Shown: in pieces, positions 763 through 63,167 of the stretch | How the letters are laid out: each line of letters begins with the position of its first letter | Numbering within the stretch: the stretch's first letter is position 1 | Virus record (IMG/VR): IMGVR_UViG_3300036853_000446 | Coordinates: 248,001-312,000 of that record | Direction: 5' to 3' (one strand) | Length of the DNA: 64,000 nucleotides | The notes under the pieces: generated by a model | Told to the model about the DNA's origin: nothing | The model's database searches: none | The model's input: the letters and a program-made list of their open reading frames with translations, nothing else | Position numbers and translations under genes: made by a program

Positions 763-790
763 GGTTCAAACCGCCGGGCTCGCCCGTACT
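763..790 (+). promoter_or_regulatory. class-1 ECF-like promoter (variant GGTTCAAA...CCCGTACT)
   Basis: 16-nt spacing, ATG at 800. Confidence 0.55.
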
Positions 791-799
791 TCCGGCAGA

Positions 800-907
800 A
801 TGTCACTCACCGAATCCAAGAAGGCTCTCGCCAGCTCCGACCCCGTCATTTTCGCGCGCAGGCCCGATTACTGGTTGAAGCCGGCGTTCCGCGGACTTCC
901 GATCTAG
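800..907 (+). CDS. 35-aa small protein
   Basis: MSLTESKKALASSDPVIFARRPDYWLKPAFRGLPI directly after a class-1 motif; below the ORF-track cutoff. Confidence 0.35.
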   Translation: MSLTESKKALASSDPVIFARRPDYWLKPAFRGLPI

Positions 908-1024
908 GTCACTTTGGTCCGGGCTGGAGACGGCCGTCATGAGAACCCCTTGCCGATCCTAGGGGTTGGGGGCGAGTTTGAATTTTTAGGGAACGAAATC
1001 GGCGGCTGGCGTCGTCATGGTCTT

Positions 1025-2254
1025 ATGATGACGACGAGCATGCAGCGGCACGAAACCAAGGCCGAACGACTGAGTCCTCTGGCGCCTGACCACGAGCGCA
1101 ACGCCGAAAATTATCCGAGCTGTTCGAACATCTCCGCTGGTCTCATCGGCTGGCAATTCACTCTCGTCCCAGAACGGCCGTCAGGTCCACCCGAGTACGT
1201 CCACGTCCCCGTCACCAGACCCTTCTCGTGGGGAGATGAGGAAGCGCTCAAAGTTCACCTCTTCGCGACTCGCTGGAATGCCGCCTGGGAAGCGGGACAC
1301 CTGCGATCGCAGATGTTCAATGAGAGCGATGTCCCTCGAACCCTGAAGTGGCTCGGAGATTATGACGATGTGGACTTACGCCTGATCGTCGCCGGCCGGG
1401 ACAATCCGTACCTTGCTTACGAGCCCCTGTACCATCTCCTGACTCTCGACACGTTGCACCACTGCGGACTGCCGCCTCTCAGGCGTGGCATATGGCCGTC
1501 GCTCGGCCCGATTGGAAATGCCCGTATGGGCGGCTACCTTCCGAGCGATTTCTCCCACCGACTGCAATCTGGCTTCTCCCGGCAGCTCTGGCCTCATCTC
1601 GAACGCCGACATCGAGGCTCGTATTCACCTCACGAGCCACTGGTCATGCTCTCGAACTGCCTGGATTTTTGGCTACCATACCTCGATCGAGTCGCGCAGA
1701 CCAGGCTCGGCGAATTCGAACGAGTTGCCCACGACGAAGAGTCGCTGGAGGCGCTCGAACATATCCCGGCAAACGTGAGAAAAAAGATCCGGCGTCCTCT
1801 AAAGGGCGGTGACATTTGGCACGGTGAGTTGGACGCGCAAGACGCCATGACTGAGATGGTGGAAGCCGCAGACGAGCGCGGCCGTCTGCGTGGAATTGTG
1901 GACGCCATACGGTCGAACAGGGTCGAGGACGACTTTTCAGCGCGATGGTCGAAAGCCAAGGCAGACTTCGAGCGTCGCCTCTATCACAAGCGCACTCACG
2001 TCAAGGTTTCGTTCGTAGAACTGGACGATACGATCCCCGTACACGCGCCCAACTCCGAGCCCGATGGGAATCTCATCTGGCAGGACCTACTGACGCTATG
2101 CGATCGACGGGAACGCCAAGTCGTCGTGTGTCTACGCAACGGCACCACTCGAGCGACCGATATCGCCCCGAAATTGGGCTACGCCAATCATAGTCCGGTC
2201 TCGAAGACCTTGGCTCGAATCCGAGCGAAGGTCGCCAAGCTATTCGACCTCTAG
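1025..2254 (+). CDS. protein with C-terminal sigma-70 region-4-like HTH
   Basis: C-term CDRRERQVVVCLRNGTTRATDIAPKLGYANHSPVSKTLARIRAKV; start uncertain. Confidence 0.6.
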   Translation: MMTTSMQRHETKAERLSPLAPDHERNAENYPSCSNISAGLIGWQFTLVPERPSGPPEYVHVPVTRPFSWGDEEALKVHLFATRWNAAWEAGHLRSQMFNESDVPRTLKWLGDYDDVDLRLIVAGRDNPYLAYEPLYHLLTLDTLHHCGLPPLRRGIWPSLGPIGNARMGGYLPSDFSHRLQSGFSRQLWPHLERRHRGSYSPHEPLVMLSNCLDFWLPYLDRVAQTRLGEFERVAHDEESLEALEHIPANVRKKIRRPLKGGDIWHGELDAQDAMTEMVEAADERGRLRGIVDAIRSNRVEDDFSARWSKAKADFERRLYHKRTHVKVSFVELDDTIPVHAPNSEPDGNLIWQDLLTLCDRRERQVVVCLRNGTTRATDIAPKLGYANHSPVSKTLARIRAKVAKLFDL

Positions 2255-2691
2255 CGTGAGACGACCGCGGACTTCGTGACGACCCCACGAATGCCGGCCC
2301 CCGTGATATCGATGTTGCCCGTCGCGCGGTTGTATTCGATGCGCTCGACGCCTCGGAACTTCGCTTCGACCGCCTCCCGCGTGAGCGTCTCGAGGGGCGG
2401 CGACTCGGCGCCGTTCATCCTAGTGAACGTCGCGTACCCCCGGCACCACTCGGACGGGTGCGCGTGGTGCATGCGACCGCTCGCGTACCTGACGCGGATC
2501 TCGCCCTTGCAGCCGGGGCAGGTGTCGACGAAGTCCCCCAGCGAATGGTCGCGACTGAGCCAGCGCCCCATCATGTCGAGGTAGCCGTCGGCGAGCTTGT
2601 CTCCCTTCGCAGCGCTCTGCCTTTGTGCGTTCAGATGCCTTTGTCGGCGTGCGTCGAGCTGTCGTCTGCGCTTCACGTCGTCTTTCGCCAT
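2251..2691 (-). CDS. hypothetical protein with CxxC
   Basis: ATG 2691, downstream of the array trailer; CPGC...H...C. Confidence 0.55.
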   Translation of the reverse strand: MAKDDVKRRRQLDARRQRHLNAQRQSAAKGDKLADGYLDMMGRWLSRDHSLGDFVDTCPGCKGEIRVRYASGRMHHAHPSEWCRGYATFTRMNGAESPPLETLTREAVEAKFRGVERIEYNRATGNIDITGAGIRGVVTKSAVVSR

Positions 2692-2723
2692 ATCGGTTTC
2701 GCCATCAGCGTGTCGTGAATCTT

Positions 2724-5652: not shown

Positions 5653-6198
5653 ATGCCCATTCTCATTGGCCACCTGCAAATCGATCCCGACCGGATGCAC
5701 ACCATCGCGGATGCGCAGAGGGTCGTGGGCTCCACGCCCGCCAACATCACGATCGTGGGCGACGTCGAGCACTATCCCGAAACGGTCCTCGAGTACCTTC
5801 TCGTTCGGGCGCTCCGTCCCATGGTCGCCCTCGGGGCCAAGGTCGAGCGCGTGCATTACTGCCGGGAATATTTCCCTCTCCACCTTCTGACGGATCACGC
5901 ATTGGAGGTTGCCCGTACTCCCCCCGAAATGACCACCACCGAGACGACGACGCCCGAAAAGACCTACACCCTCACGCTGACCGAGAACGAGATGGCTCGC
6001 GTCATCCACTCCTTGAGCGTCGACGCCGAGTCCCTACGCGCGCTGGCGGAGCCGTTCGACAGCTACGCTCTCCAGCTGGCAGAGGCTTCCGAGGCACTCA
6101 GGGACCGCCTTCGCGAAATCGTAAAGCCCTACCGTGACCCCGTCGCTCACGTCCCCACGGACGAGCGCTGGGCCGCCGAACGCCTCCACAACCTGTGA
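5653..6198 (+). CDS. hypothetical protein (internal promoter and in-frame ATG at 5929)
   Basis: ORF track; class-1 motif inside the ORF. Confidence 0.55.
   Translation: MPILIGHLQIDPDRMHTIADAQRVVGSTPANITIVGDVEHYPETVLEYLLVRALRPMVALGAKVERVHYCREYFPLHLLTDHALEVARTPPEMTTTETTTPEKTYTLTLTENEMARVIHSLSVDAESLRALAEPFDSYALQLAEASEALRDRLREIVKPYRDPVAHVPTDERWAAERLHNL
5892..5920 (+). promoter_or_regulatory. class-1 ECF-like promoter
   Basis: GGATCAC-N-CCCGTACTC, ATG 5929. Confidence 0.7.
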
Positions 6199-6822: not shown

Positions 6823-6852
6823 GGATCAAATGCCCGGGGCCCTCCCGTACTC
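6823..6852 (+). promoter_or_regulatory. class-1 ECF-like promoter
   Basis: GGATCAAA-N-CCCGTACTC, ATG 6858. Confidence 0.75.
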
Positions 6853-6857: not shown

Positions 6858-7019
6858 ATGATCCATCTCTCAAACCTTCCGGCGGAAGAAATCACGATCG
6901 TGGCATACGTTGGCCTTCTGCTCATGGGCGAGTTCATCAAACCCAAGACCAGGCCCGTGCAGATCACATTCGCGCTTCTGGCACCACTCGCAATACTCGT
7001 CCTTTGGTTCGTCAAATGA
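6858..7019 (+). CDS. 53-aa membrane protein (2 hydrophobic segments)
   Basis: ITIVAYVGLLLMG and ITFALLAPLAILVLWFV; ATGA overlap with next gene; not in ORF track. Confidence 0.6.
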   Translation: MIHLSNLPAEEITIVAYVGLLLMGEFIKPKTRPVQITFALLAPLAILVLWFVK

Positions 7020-7604: not shown

Positions 7605-7634
7605 GGATCAAACCTCCCCAGCCCGCCCGTATTC
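7605..7634 (+). promoter_or_regulatory. class-1 ECF-like promoter
   Basis: GGATCAAA-N-CCCGTATTC, ATG 7646. Confidence 0.75.
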
Positions 7635-7645: not shown

Positions 7646-7945
7646 ATGAAAAGCACTCTCGATTCGATTCAGGTTTTGGCCGCGCTCGACAACAGCACGC
7701 TCAGCGTCAAAGGCCTCGCGGAGAAGCTCACGGGCGACTCGACCAGCGAGACCGAGCGCGAGGTGGCCGATACCCTCTCGCTCCTCATCGACCAGGACAT
7801 GGTTCGAGCGTTTGAGGCCCACGGCGTGACCTGGTACGAGACGGCTGAGGCACCTCTCGTCCCGCGCCCCTCTCCCAAGCTCGACGCAGGCTACGCCGAC
7901 GAGGATCCGGGCGACGGTCGACCCGACCGCCTCTATGGCAACTGA
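7646..7945 (+). CDS. small winged-HTH-like protein
   Basis: LSVKGLAEKL...EVADTLSLLIDQDMV. Confidence 0.6.
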   Translation: MKSTLDSIQVLAALDNSTLSVKGLAEKLTGDSTSETEREVADTLSLLIDQDMVRAFEAHGVTWYETAEAPLVPRPSPKLDAGYADEDPGDGRPDRLYGN

Positions 7946-14485: not shown

Positions 14486-14514
14486 GGATCACAACGCGAA
14501 GCTGGCCCGTACTC
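14486..14514 (+). promoter_or_regulatory. class-1 ECF-like promoter
   Basis: GGATCAC-N-CCCGTACTC, ATG 14528. Confidence 0.7.
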
Positions 14515-14527: not shown

Positions 14528-14836
14528 ATGATGAACCCTTACACGCTGCACCTCACCGTCCTACAGTCCATCACGGAAGACCGCGACCCGACGCAAGTTG
14601 GTGCCATCTGTAACCCGCAACGCACCGAGGTCGCCTGGAACGACTCGTTCACGGCGTTTCGCCTCATCGCCCTAAAGTGGTGGGACGACGCTTCCTACAT
14701 CGCCTACCAGAGCGGTATCGACGGCGAGGATGACGACCGCTACGAGGGCGACCTGCAGGGCGACGAGCCCGCCGCCGTCGTAGCGGCGGTGGCACCGGCC
14801 GCTCCCCCGATCGACTCAGATGAAATCCCCTTCTGA
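14528..14836 (+). CDS. small acidic protein with SSB-like tail
   Basis: Ends DSDEIPF. Confidence 0.6.
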   Translation: MMNPYTLHLTVLQSITEDRDPTQVGAICNPQRTEVAWNDSFTAFRLIALKWWDDASYIAYQSGIDGEDDDRYEGDLQGDEPAAVVAAVAPAAPPIDSDEIPF

Positions 14837-15634: not shown

Positions 15635-15663
15635 GGATCAGCCTCTTCTCCTCACCCGTATTC
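15635..15663 (+). promoter_or_regulatory. class-1 ECF-like promoter
   Basis: GGATCAG-N-CCCGTATTC, ATG 15672. Confidence 0.7.
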
Positions 15664-15671: not shown

Positions 15672-15995
15672 ATGAAGAACACCAAAATCCAACGCTTGGC
15701 CAAAAAACTCCGCCCGGAGACCGCCGTCAAGGCTGCCCCGATCGTTGCCCCTGCCAGGGCTCCCGACCTCGTCATTCCTTTGGAGGACGTCTTCCGCTAC
15801 GAAATCAAGCTTCAGCGGGGCAGAACGCTCCGCAACGCGGAAGACCTACTGTCCCGGATCCAATCATTCGTCGAACAGCTGCGCGCCGGTGAGATTCCGA
15901 GTGCGATCAACATCAACGCCGTTGCCTTCGTCCTTTCCGACCATGCGCGGCTGCTCACCCTAGAGGAGGCGCTCGAAGTCACCACGTCCAAATAA
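15672..15995 (+). CDS. hypothetical protein
   Basis: Start set by class-1 motif. Confidence 0.6.
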   Translation: MKNTKIQRLAKKLRPETAVKAAPIVAPARAPDLVIPLEDVFRYEIKLQRGRTLRNAEDLLSRIQSFVEQLRAGEIPSAININAVAFVLSDHARLLTLEEALEVTTSK

Positions 15996-16014: not shown

Positions 16015-16043
16015 GGATCAAACCGTGGGGCTCGCCCGTACTC
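16015..16043 (+). promoter_or_regulatory. class-1 ECF-like promoter
   Basis: GGATCAAA-N-CCCGTACTC, ATG 16052. Confidence 0.75.
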
Positions 16044-16051: not shown

Positions 16052-16594
16052 ATGACAACCACCCCCGCCGTCCGCTTTCACGCCCCCACGCGCCCCTATT
16101 CGCCGATCGACGCTCTGAACCGCCGCGCCGCCGCCACGGGCTCTCCCCGTTACGGCCAGCTGACGTCCCACGCCGACTACAACGGCCATTCCGTGTCGGT
16201 ATATTTCAACGACTATCGCCAGTACTACGTCGCCGACTACACCTGGTCGGGCCGGCAGGTTCTCGGGCGCGGCGAATTCGCAACGTGTCTCGAGGCAGCA
16301 CTTTTCGAGTACGGGCGCGGCGCCCTGGGTGGCAGTGTCTCCGTCTCGGTGCGCGCCGATGATGCCGAGGCGATTGCCTTGTGTGAGGCCTCGCCCCTGC
16401 TCGTCCCGGGCGTCGAAGCTTCGCGTCCCGTGTGGTATACGTGGCGGCATGAGGTGGCAGCTTCCTGCGCGCAAGACGCCGCCGTTCGCACGCCGAAGAT
16501 GCTCTTCGATTGGTCCTTGCTCGAGTCGGCCGAGAGCCGCGAGGCTTACGAGGCGGCCTTGAAGGCGAAGCACGGCCGGGTCTACAATTTCTGA
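16052..16594 (+). CDS. hypothetical protein
   Basis: Start set by class-1 motif. Confidence 0.65.
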   Translation: MTTTPAVRFHAPTRPYSPIDALNRRAAATGSPRYGQLTSHADYNGHSVSVYFNDYRQYYVADYTWSGRQVLGRGEFATCLEAALFEYGRGALGGSVSVSVRADDAEAIALCEASPLLVPGVEASRPVWYTWRHEVAASCAQDAAVRTPKMLFDWSLLESAESREAYEAALKAKHGRVYNF

Positions 16595-19332: not shown

Positions 19333-19980
19333 ATGGAGGAGGTGTCTGGCGACATCACGTCGGCCAAATTGGCCAATGCGTACACGTGGGCCATTCGCGT
19401 CCTGCGGTTCGACGACGGCGGGCTGCTTCCGGAAATACGGGAGCGCTACGAAAGACTGGAGGGAAAGCCTGTCGAGGGGCCCTGGGGCCCTTCGCGCTCC
19501 GTATGGCAGCCGGGAATCTGGAAAACGGAACCGGATCTGGTCGAGTGGCGCTCGGCCGCCGTTCCATACCCGCTCTTGATCATCCGTGGCGACGTGGGTG
19601 CACTTTGCGGATACGTCGGTGTCCCGCCTTCGCATCCGTTTCATGGACGCTCGCCCCGCGATGTCGGCTTTGAGTTCGGCATCAATTGGGCAGGTCCCTG
19701 TGATGGCTATCGCATTCCCACGGGCGAACCTCCTGACTGCTGGTGGTTCGGCTTCGACTGCGCCCACGCGGGCAATTACGTGCCCGCTATCGCCGCCCTC
19801 GAGCAATCGATCAGCGACCTCACCGGGGCTCCCCTGAGGCTCATGAAAACGGGATTTCTCTCGAGTGGGTATTACGTGGACATCGCTGAATTGCGCCTCA
19901 GGACTGAAGCTGTAGCGATCTGGTTGTTCGAGGCGAATCAAACCGACGCACCCGACCGTACTCCCAGCAACGTCCCATGA
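19333..19980 (+). CDS. conserved phage-type hypothetical protein
   Basis: GALCGYVGVPPSHPFHG...WWFGFDCAH pattern common in phage genomes. Confidence 0.7.
   Translation: MEEVSGDITSAKLANAYTWAIRVLRFDDGGLLPEIRERYERLEGKPVEGPWGPSRSVWQPGIWKTEPDLVEWRSAAVPYPLLIIRGDVGALCGYVGVPPSHPFHGRSPRDVGFEFGINWAGPCDGYRIPTGEPPDCWWFGFDCAHAGNYVPAIAALEQSISDLTGAPLRLMKTGFLSSGYYVDIAELRLRTEAVAIWLFEANQTDAPDRTPSNVP
19935..19963 (+). promoter_or_regulatory. class-1 ECF-like promoter (variant GAATCAAA)
   Basis: ...ACCGTACTC, ATG 19977. Confidence 0.6.
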
Positions 19981-20225: not shown

Positions 20226-20254
20226 GGATCAACCCGTCGGGATTGCCCGTACTC
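20226..20254 (+). promoter_or_regulatory. class-1 ECF-like promoter
   Basis: GGATCAAC-N-CCCGTACTC, ATG 20261. Confidence 0.75.
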
Positions 20255-20260: not shown

Positions 20261-20677
20261 ATGAAGCACACGATCAAGCGCGGCGCCCTGATCATTGGGA
20301 CGATCGATTGCCCCGGCGACTCGGGCGCCTCGGTTTACGGGATGGAAGTTCTCGTGGAGTCAGCCTTCCCAGCCGTCGACCCAGACGCTGACACTCAGTT
20401 CGAGTCGTACGAGCGCGGAGAGAAGTACCTCCAGAGCGCGTACGAGGCCCACTGTGAGGCCAAGGGTATCGAGGCTATGCCGATGCCGGCCGCGTCCAAA
20501 GACCTCGACCAGGAGGACGCCTGGTACATGCGCGCCCGGGAAGCCGAGGAGGCCGCGTACTACGCCAGTCAAATGGAAGGTGTCGTCGAGGAAGTCCCCG
20601 CTGGCCAGGAAAGCCTCCCCGCATCCGCCGAGTTGCCTCCAGTCGCGAGCGACGAAGCCGATGATTTCCCTTTCTGA
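20261..20677 (+). CDS. acidic protein with SSB-like tail
   Basis: Ends DEADDFPF. Confidence 0.65.
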   Translation: MKHTIKRGALIIGTIDCPGDSGASVYGMEVLVESAFPAVDPDADTQFESYERGEKYLQSAYEAHCEAKGIEAMPMPAASKDLDQEDAWYMRAREAEEAAYYASQMEGVVEEVPAGQESLPASAELPPVASDEADDFPF

Positions 20678-28725: not shown

Positions 28726-28754
28726 GAGTACGGGTCAGCGGCTTCTTTTGATCC
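28726..28754 (-). promoter_or_regulatory. class-1 ECF-like promoter
   Basis: GGATCAAA-N-CCCGTACTC, ATG 28720. Confidence 0.75.
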
Positions 28755-29075: not shown

Positions 29076-29104
29076 GAGTACGGGTGAGGGTCAGGGTTTG
29101 ATCC
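29076..29104 (-). promoter_or_regulatory. class-1 ECF-like promoter
   Basis: GGATCAAA-N-CCCGTACTC, ATG 29070. Confidence 0.75.
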
Positions 29105-29705: not shown

Positions 29706-29734
29706 GAGTACGAGCGACGCCTTCGGTTTGCTCC
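29706..29734 (-). promoter_or_regulatory. class-1 ECF-like promoter (variant GGAGCAAA)
   Basis: ...CTCGTACTC, ATG 29692. Confidence 0.6.
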
Positions 29735-30281: not shown

Positions 30282-30310
30282 GAGTACGGGCGAGCCTGGC
30301 TCTTTGATCC
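30282..30310 (-). promoter_or_regulatory. class-1 ECF-like promoter
   Basis: GGATCAAA-N-CCCGTACTC, ATG 30271. Confidence 0.75.
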
Positions 30311-30407: not shown

Positions 30408-30437
30408 GGATCAATCCGACGGTGCCCACCCGTACTC
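30408..30437 (+). promoter_or_regulatory. class-1 ECF-like promoter
   Basis: GGATCAAT-N-CCCGTACTC, ATG 30443. Confidence 0.75.
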
Positions 30438-30803: not shown

Positions 30804-30832
30804 GGATCAAAGCGCGACCGCTGTCCGTACTC
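30804..30832 (+). promoter_or_regulatory. class-1 ECF-like promoter
   Basis: GGATCAAA-N-TCCGTACTC, ATG 30838. Confidence 0.75.
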
Positions 30833-31499: not shown

Positions 31500-31528
31500 G
31501 GATCAAACGGCTTCCGTCACCCGTATTC
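31500..31528 (+). promoter_or_regulatory. class-1 ECF-like promoter
   Basis: GGATCAAA-N-CCCGTATTC, ATG 31539. Confidence 0.75.
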
Positions 31529-32189: not shown

Positions 32190-33649
32190 CTGAACCCGCC
32201 ATCATCGTCGACCGCCGTGGTCTTGCCAGTAAACTCGCAAACCGCCCTCGTGCATTCATCCTGAACGAGCTGCTGCAGAACGCCTGGGACGAGAACGTCA
32301 CGACGGTCCGCGCGACCGTCGAGCCCCTCCCGGGCAAGGCCCAGTGCCGGATCACGGTCGAGGACGACAGCCCCGAGGGTTTCTCCGACCTGACGAGCGT
32401 CTACACGATGTTCAAGCATTCGAAGAAAGCTCCCGACCCGACGAAGCGCGGCCGCTTCGAGATGGGTGAGAAGCTCGTGATCGCCCTGGCGCTCAGCGCT
32501 GAGGTCACATCGACCAAGGGCACGGTCATTTTTGACGAGGACGGTCGGCGCACGTCACGGGCGACACGCAAGGCGGGAACGGTCTTCACGGGCGTTTTCC
32601 GCATGACTCGCGAGCAATACATCGAGCTGATCGCTTCGGCAAAGATGTTGATCCCCCCGCCCGGCATCAAAACCTATCTTGACGGCGACCTGCTCCCGCC
32701 ACGAGAGGTTCTTCATTCTTTCGAGGCGACCCTACAGACGATCCGAGCGGACGCGGACGGCAATCTGGCGCCGACGCAGCGCAAGACGGCCGTCAACGTC
32801 TACGAGGTCCTCGAGGGCGAGACGGCGCACATCTACGAGATGGGCATCCCCGTCGTCGAGACCGGCGACCGCTGGCACTACGACGTCGAGCAGCGCGTCC
32901 CCGTCAATTGGGAACGCAACAACGTGCCGCCGGCATTCCTCAGGACGTTGCGCGTGGAGGTCCTCAACGCCATGCACTCGCGCCTCTCGGAAGACGAGTC
33001 TACCGCGGCCTGGGTGACCGAAGCGGCCGCCGACGGTCGCTGCGCGCCCGAGGCCATCACCACGGTCGTTCACCGCCGCTTCGGCGACAAGGTCGTGATC
33101 CACGACCCCTCCGACCCCGAGGGGACGAAGATTGCCGTCAGCCAAGGCTACACGGTCATCCCCGGCGGGGCCTTCTCGAAGGGCGCATGGGAGAACGTCA
33201 AGACATCCGGCGCCGCCCTCCCCGCGGGGCAGGTGACGCCGAGCCCCAAGCCTTACGATGAGAACGGACGGCCCGAGAACGTCATCCCGCCCTCAAAGTG
33301 GACCCCGGATATGTCGAGAATTGCGGCCTTTGCAGAGCACATCTTTTTAAGGCTCACCGGCAAGACCTGTCGCACGACGATCGTCAGGGAGCTGCAGGCG
33401 TCGTGGGCCGCCAATTTCGGGCCCACCGATGACGGGGGCTTTCGCCTTTGCCTAAATTACGGCCGGCTCGGCAAGAAGTGGTTTGCCCTGGCGAAACGTG
33501 ACGAGCGCGTGCTCGACTTGCTGCTCCACGAGTTCGTTCACTACGAGGTGAATGATCATCTGTCCAACGAGATGCACGAAGCGGCGACGAAGCTCGGCGC
33601 GCGTCTCGTGGGAATTGCCCTCGACGAACCCAATCTTTTCAACGACTGA
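32186..33649 (+). CDS. GHKL ATPase with C-terminal HExxH domain
   Basis: ELLQNAWD (N box), EDDSPEG (G1), RGRFEMGEK (G2), GT; LLHEFVH. Confidence 0.85.
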   Translation: MTEPAIIVDRRGLASKLANRPRAFILNELLQNAWDENVTTVRATVEPLPGKAQCRITVEDDSPEGFSDLTSVYTMFKHSKKAPDPTKRGRFEMGEKLVIALALSAEVTSTKGTVIFDEDGRRTSRATRKAGTVFTGVFRMTREQYIELIASAKMLIPPPGIKTYLDGDLLPPREVLHSFEATLQTIRADADGNLAPTQRKTAVNVYEVLEGETAHIYEMGIPVVETGDRWHYDVEQRVPVNWERNNVPPAFLRTLRVEVLNAMHSRLSEDESTAAWVTEAAADGRCAPEAITTVVHRRFGDKVVIHDPSDPEGTKIAVSQGYTVIPGGAFSKGAWENVKTSGAALPAGQVTPSPKPYDENGRPENVIPPSKWTPDMSRIAAFAEHIFLRLTGKTCRTTIVRELQASWAANFGPTDDGGFRLCLNYGRLGKKWFALAKRDERVLDLLLHEFVHYEVNDHLSNEMHEAATKLGARLVGIALDEPNLFND

Positions 33650-34096: not shown

Positions 34097-35092
34097 GTGA
34101 AACGGCGCCTCAAGGAAATCACCCCGAATATCCACAACGAAAAGCTGTTTGACTCGACGGACGAGAGCCTGGCTGAGCTGGGGCGCGACATCGAGCGGAA
34201 CGGGCTGCGGTGCCCGATCCGCATCACGAAAGTTGGTGCGGTCATCATCGATGGTGAGCGTCGGTGGCGTGTCTGCAAAAAACTCGGCTGGACCCTCATC
34301 GATGTCGTGGAGGAAGACGTCCACCGGAACGAAATTCTCGGTCTCCTCATCGACACCGTTTCACAGCAGCGGCACATGACGTTGATCGAGCAGGCCCGCG
34401 TTTACGCGACGTATTACAACCACCTAAAGAGAGCGCACCGGAAGGGCGATCTCAACCACATCGCGGCCAAGCAGATCGCACTCGAGAAAGCGCGACTGCC
34501 TTTCCGATCGGTGGCTCTCGCCGATCAACTCGTGCAAGTCGTCGACCGAGGCCACCCCGACCTGCATGAGAAATTGCTCCGCGGGGAGATGAGCATCACT
34601 GGGGCCTACGAGGCCATCCTGCGACGCTTGTATAAGCCCATGAAATACGAGCTACTCCCCCGCCCCGAGCGTACCCTCGAACAGCTCGCTCGAGCCAAGC
34701 GGCATGAAGACGAACGGCTCGAAAGGCAGGAAGAGCTGGAATTTACCCAGACTTACATTGATGCCCATCTGGATGACCTCGAATCGGTGGAGGCGCAACG
34801 AAGGCTGCTCGGACTGTTCGAGCCCGATCCGCCTCCCGCGGCGCTGAAATACCGAGACAACCCCGAGAGCCAAGTCATCGCAGAGGCCTTTGAGTCCCTG
34901 GCTGTGAAGGAGCCCCCCGAGCTGCTCGTTGGGCGCCTCACGATGTTCATCGAAGAGATCGCGGCGAGCGTCCAAGGCGTCGATGAGTCGCGCGCGCGGG
35001 ACATCGTTCGAGACGTGGTCAAGCCGATGGTCCTTCGTCTCGCGCAAGCCTTCCCGCGCCAGGAGTTCGAAGTCCCCGTCAATCGGGAATGA
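34097..35092 (+). CDS. ParB N-terminal domain protein
   Basis: LAELGRDIERNGLRCPI...IIDGERRWR. Confidence 0.85.
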   Translation: MKRRLKEITPNIHNEKLFDSTDESLAELGRDIERNGLRCPIRITKVGAVIIDGERRWRVCKKLGWTLIDVVEEDVHRNEILGLLIDTVSQQRHMTLIEQARVYATYYNHLKRAHRKGDLNHIAAKQIALEKARLPFRSVALADQLVQVVDRGHPDLHEKLLRGEMSITGAYEAILRRLYKPMKYELLPRPERTLEQLARAKRHEDERLERQEELEFTQTYIDAHLDDLESVEAQRRLLGLFEPDPPPAALKYRDNPESQVIAEAFESLAVKEPPELLVGRLTMFIEEIAASVQGVDESRARDIVRDVVKPMVLRLAQAFPRQEFEVPVNRE

Positions 35093-39395: not shown

Positions 39396-39424
39396 GGATC
39401 AAACGGAAGTGCTTGTTCGTACTC
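39396..39424 (+). promoter_or_regulatory. class-1 ECF-like promoter
   Basis: GGATCAAA-N-TTCGTACTC, ATG 39430. Confidence 0.7.
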
Positions 39425-39429: not shown

Positions 39430-39735
39430 ATGCGAAACGTCCACGAAGTCCATGGCTGGAAACTCACTCCCGCGATCGGTCGTTCCACCTACGAAGGGAA
39501 GGAGGAAACCATGGCGGTTACCAAGGTCAACTGCGGCCGGGACGGGGACGGTTACCACGTCGAGTCACCGCAAGGCCTGACGTACTTCGTTCAGTTTTGG
39601 GACACGGACCGCAGGTGGACTTCGCAGAAGCTCGTGGGAGAGACCCCGAGCATGTGGCTCGAAAACTCCTCCAAAACGCTCAAGGGCATCCTCGAGACGC
39701 TCCGATTTCTCGCGTGCAAGCGGACTGCCTCGTGA
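39430..39735 (+). CDS. hypothetical protein
   Basis: Start set by class-1 motif (alternative ATG 39511 with strong RBS). Confidence 0.55.
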   Translation: MRNVHEVHGWKLTPAIGRSTYEGKEETMAVTKVNCGRDGDGYHVESPQGLTYFVQFWDTDRRWTSQKLVGETPSMWLENSSKTLKGILETLRFLACKRTAS

Positions 39736-39782: not shown

Positions 39783-40031
39783 ATGACCTTAGAGAAGAGA
39801 GCTGCTGAGGCCCTGCGCAAGGGCGAGTGTCATAAGAAACCCTGTCCATCGAAGGCAAATGCCCTCAAACGAATCGAAAGCGGAAAGGCGGACGCGATGT
39901 CCGTCGACCCATATTCCATGGGCGAGGTGACCCTCATGAATCACTTTGCGATTCGGTTTCACGATCGAACACTCGGCGCGGCGGTTCGCAAGCTGACTCT
40001 TCGCGGCTTCGGACGCGGATCAAACGACTGA
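39783..40031 (+). CDS. hypothetical protein
   Basis: RBS AAGGAG. Confidence 0.55.
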   Translation: MTLEKRAAEALRKGECHKKPCPSKANALKRIESGKADAMSVDPYSMGEVTLMNHFAIRFHDRTLGAAVRKLTLRGFGRGSND

Positions 40032-40045
40032 CGTCGCCCGTACTC
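40017..40045 (+). promoter_or_regulatory. class-1 ECF-like promoter
   Basis: GGATCAAA-N-CCCGTACTC, ATG 40054. Confidence 0.75.
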
Positions 40046-40053: not shown

Positions 40054-40335
40054 ATGACCCAAGACAAGATGACCGCAGTGGCCGAGCAACTACGAGCCCA
40101 AGGGCTCCGCGTCGCGGTCAAAAGAATCTACGCCTGCGTCGATGGCGTGGCCCGGGACGTCTACTCGCTAGACATCGACACCGGCCGCTTCGGCACGGCT
40201 AGCTGCACCGTTTTCGAGACCGAGATCGACGGTCTCGACGCCGCCAAGTTCGCAAAATCGCTGCGCGCCTCCGAGAAGAAAGCAGCACGTGCCAAGGCTG
40301 CCACCGCGTATTACACACGGTTTTTGCCGAAGTGA
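40054..40335 (+). CDS. hypothetical protein
   Basis: Start set by class-1 motif. Confidence 0.6.
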   Translation: MTQDKMTAVAEQLRAQGLRVAVKRIYACVDGVARDVYSLDIDTGRFGTASCTVFETEIDGLDAAKFAKSLRASEKKAARAKAATAYYTRFLPK

Positions 40336-41922: not shown

Positions 41923-42159
41923 GATGTCAGGTCTCCCTGTGAGGACGCTGCGACCGGAGCCGCAACGTCGAGTAGAACCTAAAGATAGCATGGCTCTCTA
42001 GTGGGCGCCAGCGGGGCGGGCGGCCGGGGACTTACGCAATCGAGTCCAGGGTTCAAAAGGCTTCCCGGAGCTGCCTCGCGACCAAAGGCGAATCACGGTC
42101 ATTGTTTCCCTTCCCTTTGGATCCCGTCGGAGGCAAACTCGCACCCCATTGAGGGGTCA

Positions 42160-43602
42160 ATGGCAAAGAGGAAGTCAAAGACGACGAGTGTCCAGCCCGG
42201 TGAAGTGCTGAAGGGGTTTCGCGTCAAACTCAGACCGACCCAGGAGGATCTGCGTTACCTATCGACGGCTCAAGTCGAGCTGATGACGATGTGGAACATC
42301 CTCGTGATAACGTGGAAGACGCACGTCGATTACTGCGTTCGGCATTGCGAGGACCTCGGGCTCATCGGACCCGTACCGCCACGACCGACCTCGGACCAAG
42401 ACACGAACGTGCCCGAAGAGATCGCCGAATGGGAGGAGTACGCGGCACTCTGCCGTGAACGCCGCCGAAGCGCTCGCGAGCAGTGTAAGACCGTCGAGGG
42501 TCTGACACGGCGCGACTGGGCGAATCGAGCCCTCGATTACCACCAACTTGATCTCACGGAGAAGGCTCGAGAGCAGACGCAGATCGATTACCGCGTCCTG
42601 CGGTCCGCCGTGAAGGGCGTCACGACGGCCCATATGGCCCAGGCCGTCATCGAGACTTACAAGGCGTCATTGCAGAAAGGGCGGCCGCCACCGAAGCTCA
42701 AGAGACGCCCGCTCGAGATGCCTCTCTTGCTTCGCAGCGGTAAGGATTTGCTTACGCTTTCAGCGAACCACTCCACCCGAACGACGGCGTCCGGGAAGAA
42801 GCGGCTCACCGGCTCCCACCACTGCATCGTCAAGTTTGGCCCGCTCAAGATCGGGGGACGATTCAACCGCCCGCCGTCGGGTCCCTTCCTCCAGGGCATT
42901 TCGATCGGGCTCGAGAAGGACGGCTGGTACGCCTCCGCGAAGGTCCGGACCCTACCTGAGGATCTGCCGAAGCCAACGAAGGAAATCATCGCGATCAACC
43001 CGGGACTCGAATGCCTCTACGCCGACAATGAGGGTTATGTGATCGAGAACCCACGGGGCAACGCTTACTCCCTCCGGATGCGCGAGATGAGCGATTGGAT
43101 CGACGACGCCGAAACCCAGTGGGACGAAGCCCACCGTCGCAACCATCAAGCTCGATATGCCGAGCGTTTCGCGCGGCACACGGAGGACCTCATCTACAGC
43201 CGCATCCTCCCGAAGCTCGCCGATTACGAGACGATTCTCATCGGCAAGGCCGGCAAAACCGCCGCTCAAGGTCGACAAAACCGCATCAGTAAGAACGACG
43301 AGGGCGGCTACGTTTCGGCCATGAGCTTGATGCAGCAGCTCATCATCCAGAGGTATGGCCTCTATGACCCCGACGAGAATCCGACGGGGCGAGTGCGAGT
43401 GCTGGAGTCCATGGGAATTTCCCGGAGGTGCTCGCGTTGCGGAACCGAGCACGCAACCCGTTATCAACGCAACAATTTACGCCGGTATGACCAACAGACC
43501 GATTGCCAGGAACCCTCGTGTCGGCTCAAGATACACGTCGATGTTGGCGCCGCTCGCAACCTGCTTTCCAACTATCGGGATTTGCAGGCGGCAGCAGAAT
43601 GA
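42160..43602 (+). CDS. compact type V (TnpB/Cas12-like) effector with inactivated RuvC, 480 aa
   Basis: TnpB-like GFRVKLRPT, PKLKRR, GWYAS; RuvC-I IIAINPG (D->N), RuvC-II TILIGK (E->G), Zn finger CSRC...CQEPSC, RuvC-III HVDVGAARNL; RBS GAGGGG; array 2 nt downstream. Confidence 0.88.
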   Translation: MAKRKSKTTSVQPGEVLKGFRVKLRPTQEDLRYLSTAQVELMTMWNILVITWKTHVDYCVRHCEDLGLIGPVPPRPTSDQDTNVPEEIAEWEEYAALCRERRRSAREQCKTVEGLTRRDWANRALDYHQLDLTEKAREQTQIDYRVLRSAVKGVTTAHMAQAVIETYKASLQKGRPPPKLKRRPLEMPLLLRSGKDLLTLSANHSTRTTASGKKRLTGSHHCIVKFGPLKIGGRFNRPPSGPFLQGISIGLEKDGWYASAKVRTLPEDLPKPTKEIIAINPGLECLYADNEGYVIENPRGNAYSLRMREMSDWIDDAETQWDEAHRRNHQARYAERFARHTEDLIYSRILPKLADYETILIGKAGKTAAQGRQNRISKNDEGGYVSAMSLMQQLIIQRYGLYDPDENPTGRVRVLESMGISRRCSRCGTEHATRYQRNNLRRYDQQTDCQEPSCRLKIHVDVGAARNLLSNYRDLQAAAE

Positions 43603-58681: not shown

Positions 58682-58846
58682 ATGGCAGCACGTCGGACCC
58701 GTTCACCATCACAAGCGCCATCAGAGCCGAATGCCGAGACGGTGCGCGTAACCTGTTACCAGGTCGACGTTTCGCGGGAACAGCAACAAGCCATTCATCA
58801 GCAGCTTCTCGAATTACTCGCTGAAATTTATCGGAACCTTAAATGA
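58682..58846 (+). CDS. 54-aa protein coupled to the recombinase
   Basis: MAARRTRS...QLLELLAEIYRNLK; ATGA overlap with 58843; not in ORF track. Confidence 0.55.
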   Translation: MAARRTRSPSQAPSEPNAETVRVTCYQVDVSREQQQAIHQQLLELLAEIYRNLK

Positions 58847-60420
58847 AGGCTGCAATCTACGCCCGTGTGTCGTCCGACCAGCAAAGGGAGCGCCACACCA
58901 TCGGCTCGCAGCTCACCGAGCTACCCAAGTACGCAAAAAGCCAAGGCTGGACGGTTGTCCGACTCTACCAAGACGACGGCAAGTCGGGAGAGAGTATCGA
59001 CGGGCGTCCAGAGTTTCAGGCACTTCTCGAGGACGCCGAGAAGAAACTCTTTGAAATTGTCCTCGTCATCGACCTCGACCGCATCACTCGCTCGAAACGT
59101 GATCAGGAGGGGGCTTTCATCTACGACACGTTTCGGTTGCATGGCATCAAGCTGGCGACTCCGAGCAACGGTCTCATCGATCTCGAGAATGAGGACCAGG
59201 ACCTTCAGATCGGTATCCTTCAGGCTTTCGCAAAGTTTGAGAAGCGGAAATTTCTCCGCCGAACGATGCGAGGTAAGTATCAGGCCGCTAAAGACGGGAA
59301 GCGGTATGGTTCGATCGATCCCTACGGGTATCGGTGGGTTATCGACCCGGTCTTGAAGGCGGGGGGCTCGTACCAGATCGTCGAGGACGAAGCTAAAGTC
59401 GTTCGTCGCATCTACAGCCTCGCTCTCGAAGGTCATGGCGTGGCAATGATCGCTTGGATGTTAGAGAATGAGGGTATTCGGACGCGACCACGCGCACCCC
59501 GTGGCACCGAAGGCAAGATCGCCGGTCCTTGGTGGCGCTCGTCTGTGCTGAAGGTTCTGCATTCCGTGACGTACACGGGATCGTTCAAAGTCCTCAAGGG
59601 GAAGGAGAGCGAACCCCTCTCGATCAAGGTCCCGCCTATTGTCACCCGGGCAACCTGGGACGCAGCCCAGAGGGCGCTCACACAGCGCAAGATGTCCTCG
59701 GGCGCTCCGGCACGACACGACCACCTCTTACGCGGATGCGCCTCGTGCGGCGTCTGCGGGTACAAGATGTGGATCGTTACCCCTAGGGCCGGCAAAAGCG
59801 CTGCCTACTACAGATGCTGCACGACCAACGGATGGCGCGGCATGGGCCTCAAGGGCCCATGTGGCAACAAGCACCACCGAGTGGACCGCACGGACCATGA
59901 GGTCCAGACGAAGGTGCTCGAGATTCTGCAAAATCCAAAGCTGCTAGCTCAAGCGTGTTCGTTGCAGGGTGAACCTACGGACGGGGTCGACTGGAAAGGT
60001 CAGCTCCGAGGTCTCGAGCAAAAGCTTGCGATACTGGATGAGGCCGCGTCCGACGCGATGGTCCGTCAGCGTCGGGGAATCATTCCTTCCGCGGTCGCCG
60101 AGAAGGAACTCCTGAACATTGCCCGCGAGCGAAAGCTCGTTGACCGAAACGTCAAACTAGCGCGTGTCAGATCCGGTAAAGCCTCAGCTGAACGCAGCCT
60201 GCGCCAAAATATCGAGGATCAAGCAAAGGCCCTAAGCAGCGGACTCGATCAAGCGGACTTTGAAACGCGACGGAAGATTATCACCCTGCTCCTTCCGAGA
60301 GAGCTGGGCTGCGGTGTCGTCCTGCACCGGGACGGTGGTATCGACATCAAATGGGTCCTGCCACTGCCCGGCGACATCGAGCACGTGGAACTACGCACCG
60401 CCCTCAAAAAAGTTGGGTGA
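58843..60420 (+). CDS. large serine recombinase (integrase)
   Basis: AAIYARVSS, DDGKSG, RPEFQALL, DLDRITR, PYGY recombinase domain, CGVC...YYRC...C Zn ribbon, coiled coil. Confidence 0.95.
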   Translation: MKAAIYARVSSDQQRERHTIGSQLTELPKYAKSQGWTVVRLYQDDGKSGESIDGRPEFQALLEDAEKKLFEIVLVIDLDRITRSKRDQEGAFIYDTFRLHGIKLATPSNGLIDLENEDQDLQIGILQAFAKFEKRKFLRRTMRGKYQAAKDGKRYGSIDPYGYRWVIDPVLKAGGSYQIVEDEAKVVRRIYSLALEGHGVAMIAWMLENEGIRTRPRAPRGTEGKIAGPWWRSSVLKVLHSVTYTGSFKVLKGKESEPLSIKVPPIVTRATWDAAQRALTQRKMSSGAPARHDHLLRGCASCGVCGYKMWIVTPRAGKSAAYYRCCTTNGWRGMGLKGPCGNKHHRVDRTDHEVQTKVLEILQNPKLLAQACSLQGEPTDGVDWKGQLRGLEQKLAILDEAASDAMVRQRRGIIPSAVAEKELLNIARERKLVDRNVKLARVRSGKASAERSLRQNIEDQAKALSSGLDQADFETRRKIITLLLPRELGCGVVLHRDGGIDIKWVLPLPGDIEHVELRTALKKVG

Positions 60421-61134: not shown

Positions 61135-61143
61135 TGAGCAGAG

Positions 61144-61953
61144 ATGCAGGTAGTATCGCGGGGAAAGTATGAAGGAGTACCTTGGGAGGAATTCTTCGAG
61201 GACTTCGACTTCGGCGTAGAAGAGCATGCAGAGGACTACCTCGATGTTCTATTGGCGCCGCTGCGCGAAAGTGGCAAGTACGTGCGGCGTGAGATGCCGC
61301 AGGCCGATGCGTTCTCCGAATGGTTCGGCCTCAATACTCCGGCTATGCTCGAGGCGAAGACGAGAGCCGGCATGGTCACCTCGATCTATCGGCAGATCGG
61401 CATTGGCTGTGAGCGCCTCATGCGGAGAGTTATCCAAGACAATCTTGGCGTTCCCGCGTCGAGCTGTTCATGGGCGCACGTCGTCGAGGGACAAAATCGC
61501 TCACTGGATGCCCGAATACCGCTCGAATCAATTACGGCGAGGCGCAACGAATTTGAAGGCTGGATCTGCGAGGCCTCGGCACATCTTGGATGCGGTCCGA
61601 TGAATGCCGGGGCAGTGTTTGAGGTACGACAAGGCCACAAGAGCGGTGATTCGAAGAGGCAGGTAGGGGATCGCCTCAATGCCGCAAAGGCACTATCGGA
61701 GGGCTACCTTCCCGTCATGTTAGTAGTCTCGACGCAAATTCCAGAGGCGACACGAAGACGATACATCAAGGATGGTTGGCTAGTGTTGACAGGCAGGTTT
61801 GGCGGTGGCGCACTCAGGAGCAGCTACGCCTTCTTCGCTGACGTCCTAGGTTTTGACCTTGCCGGCTTCCTGGAAGACCACCAAGTGCACTTGAAAGAGT
61901 TGGTCCAATCCACTCTCAGTCGGGGCATGACGCCGCACTCGATGCAACCGTAG
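61144..61953 (+). CDS. putative type II restriction endonuclease-like (PD-(D/E)XK) protein
   Basis: SIYRQIGIGCE...SLDARI...AVFEVRQGHKSGDSKRQ. Confidence 0.65.
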   Translation: MQVVSRGKYEGVPWEEFFEDFDFGVEEHAEDYLDVLLAPLRESGKYVRREMPQADAFSEWFGLNTPAMLEAKTRAGMVTSIYRQIGIGCERLMRRVIQDNLGVPASSCSWAHVVEGQNRSLDARIPLESITARRNEFEGWICEASAHLGCGPMNAGAVFEVRQGHKSGDSKRQVGDRLNAAKALSEGYLPVMLVVSTQIPEATRRRYIKDGWLVLTGRFGGGALRSSYAFFADVLGFDLAGFLEDHQVHLKELVQSTLSRGMTPHSMQP

Positions 61954-62025
61954 AAGCCCAAGCGCGCGAACATGCGGTGCCCTTCGGGTGAGAGAGGGCA
62001 AGCAGCAGTCCGACAAGCGTTCACG

Positions 62026-62574
62026 CTAAGGGCGCGTCGGAACATCGTGCTCGGGTAGCACGCGACAGAGCCGGTGGTCCCGCACGAGGAGCCGCCAGCG
62101 GGGCTTTCCAAACTTGGCGCCGCGTCCCTTGGCCCGCCACAACTCGTTGCCGTTGTCTTGCGTCCGCGAGAACGACGCCGTCCTCAGGACCTCCGACAGC
62201 TCTTGCCGGGCCTTTGCCAAGCCGGCTGGGTTGTCCTCGCCACACGAGAGCAAACAGAAATCGCGGACCACGCTGACCGACAGCTTGCCGGGCTCGCATT
62301 CGATGTAGCGCTCGGGAGCCGGTACTTGAGCGACGTTGGCCCTCAACGTTTCAGCCCGCGCGCGGTGTCTCTCGGTGGTTACGATCTCGACCTTCCACGT
62401 GTCGCGGGCGTCCGTACCGCTGCCCGTGAGCGTGAGGCGATCCGTGACGTAACCCCGCTCCGCACAGCGCGTCGCGATCGCTTCGAGACTCGCCGTCACC
62501 TCCGACCAGAAACGCCCGTCGGAGGTGACACGCTGTGCCGCGTCCGGCTCGGTGACGCGGAGAGTCGACTTCAC
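62026..62574 (-). CDS. hypothetical protein
   Basis: GTGA overlap with upstream gene. Confidence 0.55.
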   Translation of the reverse strand: MKSTLRVTEPDAAQRVTSDGRFWSEVTASLEAIATRCAERGYVTDRLTLTGSGTDARDTWKVEIVTTERHRARAETLRANVAQVPAPERYIECEPGKLSVSVVRDFCLLSCGEDNPAGLAKARQELSEVLRTASFSRTQDNGNELWRAKGRGAKFGKPRWRLLVRDHRLCRVLPEHDVPTRP

Positions 62575-63092
62575 GCCGCCGTCGAGGCGCTGAGAAACTG
62601 CGCCAGAAGCGCACGCAACACCGGTTCCGCCTCCTGCAGGTCCTCGAGTGTGGGGGTCATCCGCTCCCATTCGATCGTAATATCACGGTCGCGGTCGCCG
62701 GGGTGGGCGGCATATTGGCCGACGCGGCCGGTGCCCGATTCATCGGAGCTGTACCAGAAACCATTGCGTCCGAGGTAGCAGCCACCGTCGGTCGTCTGCC
62801 GGCGCCAGGTGTGATAGAAGCCCGTCTCCGTCGGCACGTCCTCGGTTTCTCGACCGCGGACACGGACGACCGAAGGTCCGCGGCCATGCCGCTCTTCGCT
62901 CGGTGGGTAACTGTTGTCGAAATGCCCCGCCTCATCCGTGATGCTCGTGCTGGTGCCCTTCCAGACGTCGGGCTGCCGACGCGCCAGGATCTTGCCCATT
63001 GCGTTACACAAGCGCAGCAGCCGGGTCTGTTCCTCAGCGTCGGTTTGCTCGATTTTGGCGGCCAGTTCTTCGAGCTGTTCAATCGTTATCAT
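62571..63092 (-). CDS. hypothetical protein
   Basis: RBS GGGAGAG; class-1 motif upstream. Confidence 0.65.
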   Translation of the reverse strand: MITIEQLEELAAKIEQTDAEEQTRLLRLCNAMGKILARRQPDVWKGTSTSITDEAGHFDNSYPPSEERHGRGPSVVRVRGRETEDVPTETGFYHTWRRQTTDGGCYLGRNGFWYSSDESGTGRVGQYAAHPGDRDRDITIEWERMTPTLEDLQEAEPVLRALLAQFLSASTAA

Positions 63093-63138
63093 GATCTCTC
63101 CCAAGGGTGAGCGCTTGTTGACGTGCGCTTGCCCTAGA

Positions 63139-63167
63139 GAGTACGGGCCAGGGTTCAGGTTTGATCC
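63139..63167 (-). promoter_or_regulatory. class-1 ECF-like promoter
   Basis: GGATCAAA-N-CCCGTACTC. Confidence 0.75.

What the first reader, a model, noticed from the sequence alone, without database searches (positions are those of the whole stretch)
763..63167. ECF-type promoter motif repeated at least 19 times (GGATCAAA-N-CCCGTAYTC)
Seen: GGATCA, 16-17 nt, then CGTAYTC at 763, 5892, 6823, 7605, 14486, 15635, 16015, 19935, 20226, 30408, 30804, 31500, 39396, 40017 (+) and ending at 28754, 29104, 29734, 30310, 63167 (-). A start codon nearly always follows 5-14 nt later, often with no Shine-Dalgarno. Known: ECF sigma promoters typically have a GGAAC-like -35, a CGT -10 and 16-17 nt spacing. 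Inference: one alternative sigma factor drives a large set of small, leaderless or short-leader genes. The motif also reveals ORFs the track missed (800-907, 6858-7019).
Basis: partly seen in the sequence, partly recalled or inferred. Interest (0 to 1): 0.75.

Follow-up and report, generated by a model that had tools for sequence, protein, structure and literature searches.

The report
Leaderless-gene promoter class in a jumbo phage
A 407-kb soil phage carries about 35 copies of a two-block promoter that sits right against the start codons of small accessory genes; sister phages have the same kind of promoter tied to their own sigma factor, but no such factor gene was found in this phage.

Summary
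The motif is real.

The window lies in a 407,634-bp IMG/VR jumbo-phage contig from soil. Genome-wide there are 22 exact and 34 one-mismatch sites. All exact sites fall in the lineage-specific small-gene region (209-314 kb).

Only the two blocks are conserved; flanks and spacers are random. Sites sit in short gaps, co-oriented with the next gene. ATG follows 3-14 nt later in 27 of 30 units. A Shine-Dalgarno-like sequence appears in 1 of 30, against 35% of other genes. This anatomy fits sigma-type promoters that make leaderless mRNAs.

The nearest relative, G001, has 29 homologous sites with the same -10 (CGTAYTA) but a different -35 (CTTAA). One sits 5 nt before a phage-encoded 187-aa FliA/WhiG-like sigma gene, and four more contigs repeat that arrangement.

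This phage has no detectable homologue of that sigma. Its own sigma for these promoters is therefore unresolved: a host factor or an unrecognised phage protein.

No transcription start sites could be mapped. "ECF-type" is only loosely right.

The parts
763..791 (+). Weak class-1 site (GGTTCA-N16-CGTACTT, 2 mismatches); ATG at 800 opens a 35-codon ORF (800-907)
5892..5920 (+). Class-1 promoter, spacer 16; ATG 8 nt later (5929-6198, 89 aa). My gene caller extended this ORF upstream in the same frame.
6823..6852 (+). Class-1 promoter, spacer 17; ATG 5 nt later (6858-7019, 53 aa)
7605..7634 (+). Class-1 promoter, spacer 17; ATG 11 nt later (7646-7945, 99 aa)
14486..14514 (+). Class-1 promoter; ATG 13 nt later (14528-14836, 102 aa)
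15635..15663 (+). Class-1 promoter; ATG 8 nt later (15672-15995, 107 aa)
16015..16043 (+). Class-1 promoter; ATG 8 nt later (16052-16594, 180 aa)
19935..19963 (+). Near match (GAATCA); lies inside a called CDS and the downstream ORF has a negative coding score, so function is doubtful
20226..20254 (+). Class-1 promoter; ATG 6 nt later (20261-20677, 138 aa)
28726..28754 (-). Class-1 promoter; ATG 5 nt later (gene 28720-28223, 165 aa)
29076..29104 (-). Class-1 promoter; ATG 5 nt later (gene 29070-28735, 111 aa)
29706..29734 (-). Near match (GGAGCA); ATG 13 nt later (gene 29692-29420, 90 aa)
30282..30310 (-). Class-1 promoter; ATG 10 nt later (gene 30271-29741, 176 aa); divergent partner of the site at 30408
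30408..30437 (+). Class-1 promoter, spacer 17; ATG 5 nt later (30443-30730, 95 aa)
30804..30832 (+). Class-1 promoter; ATG 5 nt later (30838-31026, 62 aa)
31500..31528 (+). Class-1 promoter; start at 31539 (216 aa), followed by a 487-aa HATPase-like gene
39396..39424 (+). Class-1 promoter; ATG 5 nt later (39430-39735, 101 aa)
40017..40045 (+). Class-1 promoter; ATG 8 nt later (40054-40335, 93 aa)
63139..63167 (-). Class-1 promoter with a longer leader; ATG 46 nt later (gene 63092-62571, 173 aa)

Best explanation
The repeats are a phage-specific class of bipartite promoters. They have a -35-like block cGGATCAAA, a non-conserved spacer, and a -10-like block TcRCC-CGTAYTC. They are most likely read by bacterial RNA polymerase carrying a small alternative sigma70-family factor.

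Each site drives a short unit of lineage-specific accessory genes. The start codon lies 5-13 nt after the motif, so transcription should begin at or a few bases before the ATG. That would give leaderless or near-leaderless mRNAs translated without a Shine-Dalgarno sequence.

What is shown: the anatomy, the enrichment, the placement, and the homologous promoter class in sister phages sitting in front of a phage sigma gene.

What is inferred: that these are promoters, where transcription starts, and that the mRNAs are translated leaderless.

What is unresolved: which sigma acts in this phage. I favour a host FliA/WhiG-like sigma of the type the sister phages captured (about 0.4). The second candidate is an unrecognised phage protein, such as the divergent sigma-like 322-aa protein at genome 179,609-180,577 (about 0.35).
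For: - Enrichment: 16 exact sites against 0.01 expected. Genome-wide there are 22 exact and 34 one-mismatch sites, and all exact sites lie at 209-314 kb.
- Selection on the blocks only: pairwise identity is 0.91 and 0.84 in the blocks, 0.27-0.28 in the flanks and 0.35 in the spacer. The downstream proteins are not paralogues.
- Placement: 14 of 19 window sites are fully intergenic. 20 of 35 genome sites have a called co-oriented start 0-20 nt downstream (binomial P = 3e-30).
- Start codons: 27 of 30 are ATG. SD-like sequence occurs in 1 of 30, against 35% of other genes.
- No phage RNA polymerase was found with Pfam models PF00562 or PF00940. Sigma70-type promoters are not in excess in window 14-33 kb (5 against 3.3).
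- Relative G001 (TerL 59% identical) has 29 CTTAA-N17-19-CGTAYT[AC] sites against 0.7 expected, with ATG exactly 5 nt after in 19 of them.
- One G001 site lies 5 nt before a 187-aa sigma gene (TIGR02937, 95.5 bits).
- The same promoter-ATG-sigma arrangement occurs in four further contigs, L118-L121.
- A G000-type site (GGATCA-N16-CGTACTC-N5-ATG) is present in an independent related contig, L162.
- Autoregulation, near-consensus promoters and 16-18-bp spacers are typical of small sigma factors (PMC7776599).
Against: - No transcription start site data: no RNA run was listed.
- No homologue of the sister phages' sigma was found in this genome by tblastn, phmmer, or a family HMM run with --max on all six-frame ORFs.
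- No sigma70 region 2 was found anywhere in the genome.
- By synteny with G002 the two contig ends are adjacent, so little sequence is missing.
- The motif is not enriched in any of 401 sampled Myxococcota genomes (at most 3 per genome) or in the Polyangiaceae genome G006.
- Two window sites (5892, 19935) fall inside my CDS calls. The 19935 site looks non-functional.
- My gene calls come from a home-made caller.
Confidence: 0.75

Rival explanations
1. Sigma appropriation. The -10-like block is read by one sigma (host or phage) in both phage lineages. The upstream block (GGATCAAA here, CTTAA in G001) is the binding box of a lineage-specific phage activator, as the MotA box is at T4 middle promoters.
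For: The -10 block is the same and the upstream block differs between G000 and G001. No cognate sigma gene was found in G000. G000 encodes an ART-PolyVal ADP-ribosyltransferase, a domain found in polyvalent proteins; that it might act on host RNA polymerase is conjecture.
Against: The -10 block does not resemble a primary-sigma -10 (TAnnnT). In five sister phages the promoter sits on a sigma gene. No activator candidate was identified. The 16/17-nt spacing is classic sigma4/sigma2 geometry.
Confidence: 0.12
2. A translation-initiation or operator element rather than a promoter. It would be a start-associated sequence bound by a protein or the ribosome, like the start-associated sequences of Cluster K mycobacteriophages, or a repressor operator.
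For: It lies at a tight distance from start codons.
Against: There is no complementarity to an anti-SD sequence, and SD-like sequence occurs in 1 of 30 units. The structure is bipartite, with a variable spacer of non-conserved sequence and no dyad symmetry. The distance to the ATG varies from 3 to 46 nt. The homologous class is linked to an autoregulated sigma gene in relatives.
Confidence: 0.06
3. A repeat spread by duplication or by a mobile cassette (a moron-type element carrying its own short sequence) with no shared regulatory function.
For: The sites are confined to the hypervariable accessory region.
Against: Flank identity is at random level and there are no paralogues among the downstream proteins. 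Orientation and distance to start codons are strict.
Confidence: 0.03

Closest known systems
Late promoters of Salmonella phage 7-11, read by host RNA polymerase with phage sigma gp47 (bipartite GTAAtg-N16-aCTA; PMC8948821)
   Same: A phage-specific bipartite promoter with a 16-bp spacer, read through an alternative sigma. Related phages have different promoter elements matching their diverged sigmas.
   Different: Phage 7-11 has 8 promoters before late structural genes, with mapped start sites and a known sigma. Here there are about 35 sites before small accessory genes, abutting the ATG, with no identified sigma in this genome and no start-site data.
ECF sigma promoters, e.g. B. subtilis sigma-W TGAAAC-N16-CGTA (my own knowledge); general properties from PMC7776599
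   Same: A CGT(A) core in the -10, a 16-17-nt spacer, near-consensus high-information sites, and an autoregulated sigma gene in the sister phages.
   Different: The -35 block lacks the AAC core. The sigma in relatives scores best as FliA/WhiG-like. No ECF gene was found in this genome.
Sigma-28 (FliA/WhiG) promoters, TAAA-N15-GCCGATAA (my own knowledge)
   Same: The sigma linked to the class in relatives is FliA/WhiG-like. G001's TTAA-N16-nnCGTAYTA matches the sigma-28 geometry, and a 'CCG' precedes the AT-rich part of the -10.
   Different: The -10 reads CCGTAYT, not CCGATAA. In this phage the upstream block sits about 3 nt closer. The phage sigma lacks region 3 (187 aa).
Phage-encoded homologues of host alternative sigma factors (PMC9429907)
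   Same: The sister phages' sigma is about 56% identical to bacterial sigmas, some labelled Polyangiaceae. That points to capture from the host lineage.
   Different: In that work the phage sigmas act on host sporulation programmes. Here the sigma has a large regulon of the phage's own genes, and the window's phage lacks the gene.
phiEco32 gp36 promoters (AATGTA centred at -11.5; PMC12276001, PMC8948821)
   Same: This resembles the second motif seen here (GGTGTA, 9-13 nt before ATG). The best structural match of G000's 322-aa protein is chain F of the gp79-dependent open complex 9m7y (Z 6.2, weak). Chain F is presumably gp36, the sigma named for that complex in PMC12276001.
   Different: This concerns class 2, not the reported motif. 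The structural match is weak.

Membership tests
ECF sigma-dependent promoters | Bipartite -35/-10 with a 16-18-nt non-conserved spacer | tested here: met
   Spacer is 16 (26 sites) or 17 nt. Blocks are 0.84-0.91 identical and the spacer 0.35.
ECF sigma-dependent promoters | 'AAC' core in the -35 and 'CGT' core in the -10 | tested here: inconclusive
   CGTA is invariant, but the -35 is GGATCAAA with no AAC at the usual place. The consensus is from my own knowledge.
ECF sigma-dependent promoters | A cognate ECF sigma gene, often autoregulated | tested here: not met
   G000 has no sigma2-bearing gene. In G001 and four other contigs an autoregulated sigma is present, but it is FliA/WhiG-like.
Sigma-28 / FliA-WhiG promoters | TAAA-N15-GCCGATAA consensus and geometry | tested here: inconclusive
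   Compared by eye. G001's geometry fits; G000's upstream block is about 3 nt closer; the -10 shares only CCG and a final T.
Sigma-28 / FliA-WhiG promoters | A FliA/WhiG-family sigma present | tested here: not met
   Absent from G000. Present in G001 at 129 bits, below the TIGR02479 cut-off of 189.6.
Promoter (any class) | Transcripts start a few nt downstream of the -10 block | not testable with these tools
   Only one DNA run of a soil metagenome was listed, and no RNA run.
Single-subunit (T7-like) or phage multisubunit RNA polymerase promoters | The phage encodes its own RNA polymerase | tested here: not met
   PF00940 and PF00562 gave no match at E <= 10. Pfam scans of the 30 largest proteins outside the window and 10 window ORFs found no RNA polymerase. 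The PF00940 control rang nowhere, so that search is weak.
T4-type middle promoters (activator box plus primary-sigma -10) | The -10 matches the primary sigma consensus TAnnnT | tested here: not met
   The -10 block is CCCGTAYTC.
Start-associated sequences (Cluster K mycobacteriophages) | A single contiguous element with an SD-like core 3-8 nt before the start | tested here: not met
   The element has two blocks with a variable spacer, and SD-like sequence occurs in 1 of 30 units.

The most novel reading that the evidence does not exclude
This jumbo phage has no sigma of its own for about 35 near-consensus promoters. In its sister phages the same promoter type is served by a captured, autoregulated FliA/WhiG-like sigma. 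This phage would therefore tie expression of its whole accessory, host-takeover gene set to a host alternative sigma (probably of a Myxococcota-like host), and so to the host's physiological or developmental state. The -35 swap between sister lineages (GGATCAAA against CTTAA, with the same -10) would then mark two orthogonal promoter dialects within one phage clade.
Probability: 0.3. Interest if true: 0.7.

Novelty: new variant of a known kind. Interest (0 to 1): 0.5.

Why it matters
If confirmed, this gives a ready regulon map for an uncultivated 400-kb soil phage. That includes about 30 leaderless transcription units, among them small ORFs that gene callers miss.

The sister lineages keep the same -10 but use different -35 blocks, one of them with a known cognate sigma. 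That is a natural experiment in sigma4/-35 specificity and could supply orthogonal sigma-promoter parts.

It also raises a testable question: can a jumbo phage run a large gene class on a host alternative sigma alone?

It shows too that start codons in such phages can be located from promoter position rather than from Shine-Dalgarno signals.

Tried and rejected
- RNA evidence: no RNA run was listed for the region.
- Phage database: megablast of 12 kb of the window found nothing.
- Exact-motif scans: IMG/VR and JGI metagenomes gave only single, chance-level hits. Three of the metagenome hits were one conserved unrelated locus.
- Other relatives: the motif is absent from G002 to G005, and the -10-plus-ATG signature is absent from G003, G004, G005, G007 and G008.
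- Host via prophages: TerL against GTDB genomes found no relative.
- Host regulon: the pattern is not enriched in 401 Myxococcota genomes or in genome G006.
- Bacterial sigma homologues: only one of five loci has a CTTAAC-N17-CGAC site, so their upstream regions show no consistent motif.
- Search for a G000 sigma: Pfam on 10 class-1-driven proteins, on 20 proteins shared with G001 but not G002, and on 10 neighbours of the methylase found none.
- The only sigma-like Pfam hit in G000 is a 238-aa protein with two sigma4-like domains. It is core and conserved in class-1-negative G002, so it does not explain class 1.
- Host via a TnpB-like gene: its homologues carry no organism names.
- Foldseek of the 322-aa protein model against PDB gave nothing significant.
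- A G002 'TTGGGAC' repeat appears to be the conserved 3' end of a run of similar ORFs rather than a promoter (read by eye).
Full report
**1. The observation**

GGATCA-N15-18-CGTAYTC occurs 16 times in the window. Dinucleotide shuffles give a mean of 0.01, and none of 100 reaches 16. All 16 have a spacer of 16 or 17 nt.

Sequence outside the blocks carries no information.

**2. Where the window lies**

The window is bases 248,001-312,000 of a single 407,634-bp IMG/VR virus contig. The contig is linear, with a CheckV completeness estimate of 86%. Its only listed sequencing run is a soil metagenome.

The contig encodes:
- baseplate J, lysozyme, a portal protein and a large terminase;
- UvrD- and RecD-type helicases, an NAD-dependent ligase, a ribonucleotide reductase and GroEL;
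- 30 tRNA genes at 140-165 kb.

It is therefore a jumbo tailed phage.

The genome has two parts. At 0-140 kb and 350-407 kb there are large genes, nearly all on the minus strand. At about 190-350 kb there are small genes on both strands.

Only the first part is syntenic with the complete relative G002. In that map the two ends of the contig are adjacent, so little of the genome is missing.

Genome-wide there are 22 exact sites and 34 with at most one mismatch. All exact sites lie at 209-314 kb, inside the lineage-specific small-gene region.

**3. Anatomy**

I called genes with a home-made periodic Markov caller.

- Of the 19 window sites, 14 are fully intergenic and 2 overlap only the 3' end of the upstream gene.
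- Of 35 genome sites, 20 have a called co-oriented start 0-20 nt downstream. The chance is 0.011 per site, giving a binomial P of 3e-30.
- An ORF of at least 20 aa starts within 3-14 nt of the motif in 30 of 34 sites. The commonest distance is 5 nt.
- 27 of those 30 start codons are ATG.
- An SD-like tetramer at -16..-5 is present in 1 of 30, against 35% of other genes.
- The downstream proteins are not paralogues.
- Flanks are 27-28% identical pairwise, the spacer core 35%, and the blocks 84-91%.

The blocks are therefore kept by selection and not copied along with their genes.

Rfam finds nothing in the window. Sigma70-type promoter matches are at chance level in 14-33 kb. No phage RNA polymerase was detected.

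**4. Relatives**

TerL finds a clade of jumbo-phage contigs. I fetched two of them whole.

*G002* (398 kb, terminal repeats, GC 48%) lacks the motif and uses strong Shine-Dalgarno sequences.

*G001* (452 kb, GC 52%, TerL 59% identical) has 29 sites CTTAA-N17-19-CGTAYT[AC] against 0.7 expected. ATG lies exactly 5 nt after in 19 of them, again in its small-gene region. The -10 block and the geometry are therefore shared with the window's phage, while the -35 block differs.

G001 encodes a true sigma70-family protein of 187 aa (TIGR02937, 95.5 bits). Its ATG lies 5 nt after one of these sites. The same arrangement, cCTTAAGt-N17-CGTAYTA-N5-ATG followed by the sigma gene, recurs in four further contigs whose sigmas are 65-79% identical.

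By NCBIfam this sigma is closest to FliA/WhiG (129 bits, below the cut-off). Only sigma2 and sigma4 are matched.

Its bacterial homologues are about 56% identical and about 280 aa long. Some are labelled Polyangiaceae, and they lie next to pilMNOP. This points to Myxococcota as the host lineage of the G001 group.

Autoregulation and near-consensus bipartite promoters are hallmarks of small sigma factors (PMC7776599).

**5. The gap**

The window's phage has no homologue of that sigma. This holds for tblastn, for phmmer, and for an HMM of 120 family members run with --max on every six-frame ORF. No sigma70 region 2 is found anywhere in the genome.

Two sigma-like candidates remain:

- *A 238-aa protein with two sigma4-like domains*. 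It is core and conserved in class-1-negative G002, so it does not explain class 1.
- *A 322-aa protein at 179,609-180,577.* It is the positional orthologue of a weakly ECF-like protein of G001 and G002, but only about 20% identical to them. Its AF2 model has pLDDT 78. The best wide structural match is chain F of 9m7y, the phiEco32 gp79-dependent open complex, presumably its sigma gp36 (Z 6.2). Other sigma chains follow at Z 4-5. These matches are weak, and Foldseek found nothing significant.

This 322-aa protein has 22 homologues (43-72% identical) in other metagenomes. One 107-kb contig, of which I read 21 kb, carries a GGATCA-N16-CGTACTC-N5-ATG site. The window's version of the motif therefore exists in an independent relative.

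**6. A second promoter-like motif**

GGTGTA lies 9-13 nt before the start codon. It is present in the 60 nt upstream of 56 G000 genes against 4.4 expected, and it is equally prominent in G001 and G002. It has no -35 block and resembles the gp36 element AATGTA centred at -11.5 (PMC12276001, PMC8948821).

The parsimonious pairing is:
- GGTGTA with the conserved gp36-like protein;
- the CGTAYT class with the FliA/WhiG-like sigma.

That pairing leaves this phage's CGTAYT class without a phage-encoded factor.

**7. Conclusion**

The reported repeats are best read as a class of alternative-sigma promoters that produce leaderless mRNAs for accessory genes (confidence 0.75).

Which sigma acts here is open. 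The candidates are a host FliA/WhiG-like sigma (about 0.4), an unrecognised or diverged phage protein (about 0.35), or an activator-assisted scheme.

Two searches argue neither way: the motif is not enriched in 401 sampled Myxococcota genomes, and the bacterial sigma genes show no consistent upstream motif.

No transcription start site data exist, and that is the decisive missing test.

Noticed in passing
window 335+, 4440+, 22706-, 34081+, 36347-, 45917-, 47307-, 47891-, 47948+, 48580+, 58667+, 61129+, 63453- (first G of GGTGTA): A second, more abundant promoter-like motif, (C)GGTGTA, lies 9-13 nt before start codons and has no -35 block. CGGTGTA occurs 101 times genome-wide. The motif is conserved in relatives G001 (TtGGTGTATA) and G002 (GGTGTAAT) and resembles the phiEco32 gp36 element AATGTA.
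   Followed up: partly
G000 179,609-180,577 (-) = L043:8918-9886: A 322-aa protein next to the N6/N4 methylase is the positional orthologue of a weakly ECF-like protein of G001 and G002, at only about 20% identity. Its best wide structural match is chain F (presumably sigma gp36) of the phiEco32 gp79-dependent open complex 9m7y (Z 6.2, weak). It has 22 homologues in other metagenomes.
   Followed up: partly
G000 107,861-108,577 (-) = L002:1114-1830: A core 238-aa protein has two tandem sigma70 region-4-like HTH domains and no region 2. It is 48% identical in G001 and G002. Its upstream neighbour fuses a NusG/KOW-like N-terminus to a 5'-3' exonuclease.
   Followed up: partly
window 42001-43602 (+): A TnpB/Cas12f1-like protein (weak TNB-domain and transposase hits) has 12 homologues at 52-74% identity in metagenomes, none with a taxonomic label.
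   Followed up: partly
window 58843-60420 (+): A large serine recombinase (Resolvase, Recombinase and zinc-ribbon domains; PHROG integrase, E = 1.6e-89) in a jumbo phage. A tyrosine recombinase at genome 323,245-324,045 sits behind a one-mismatch class-1 site.
   Followed up: no
window 32186-33649 and 34097-35092 (+): A 487-aa HATPase_c-like protein follows a class-1-driven 216-aa gene. Next comes a ParB-N-domain protein of 331 aa with its own GGTGTA site.
   Followed up: no
G000 178,804-179,604 (-) = L043:8113-8913: A 266-aa protein carries an ART-PolyVal ADP-ribosyltransferase domain (E = 3e-11) next to the sigma-like gene. It might modify host RNA polymerase, but that is conjecture.
   Followed up: no
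G000 208,130-209,535 (-): RtcB RNA ligase is called as two overlapping ORFs (254 and 242 aa) that match a single 467-aa gene in G001. This may be a frameshift, an assembly error or an insertion.
   Followed up: no
G000 140,248-164,650 (-): An array of 30 tRNA genes, all on the minus strand, lies between the core and accessory regions.
   Followed up: no
G002 (L073-L075), about 50-82 kb: A repeated CTTTGGGAYCAT sequence lies just before many start codons. It appears to be the conserved 3' end (reading ...LWDHL) of a run of similar small ORFs, not a promoter.
   Followed up: partly
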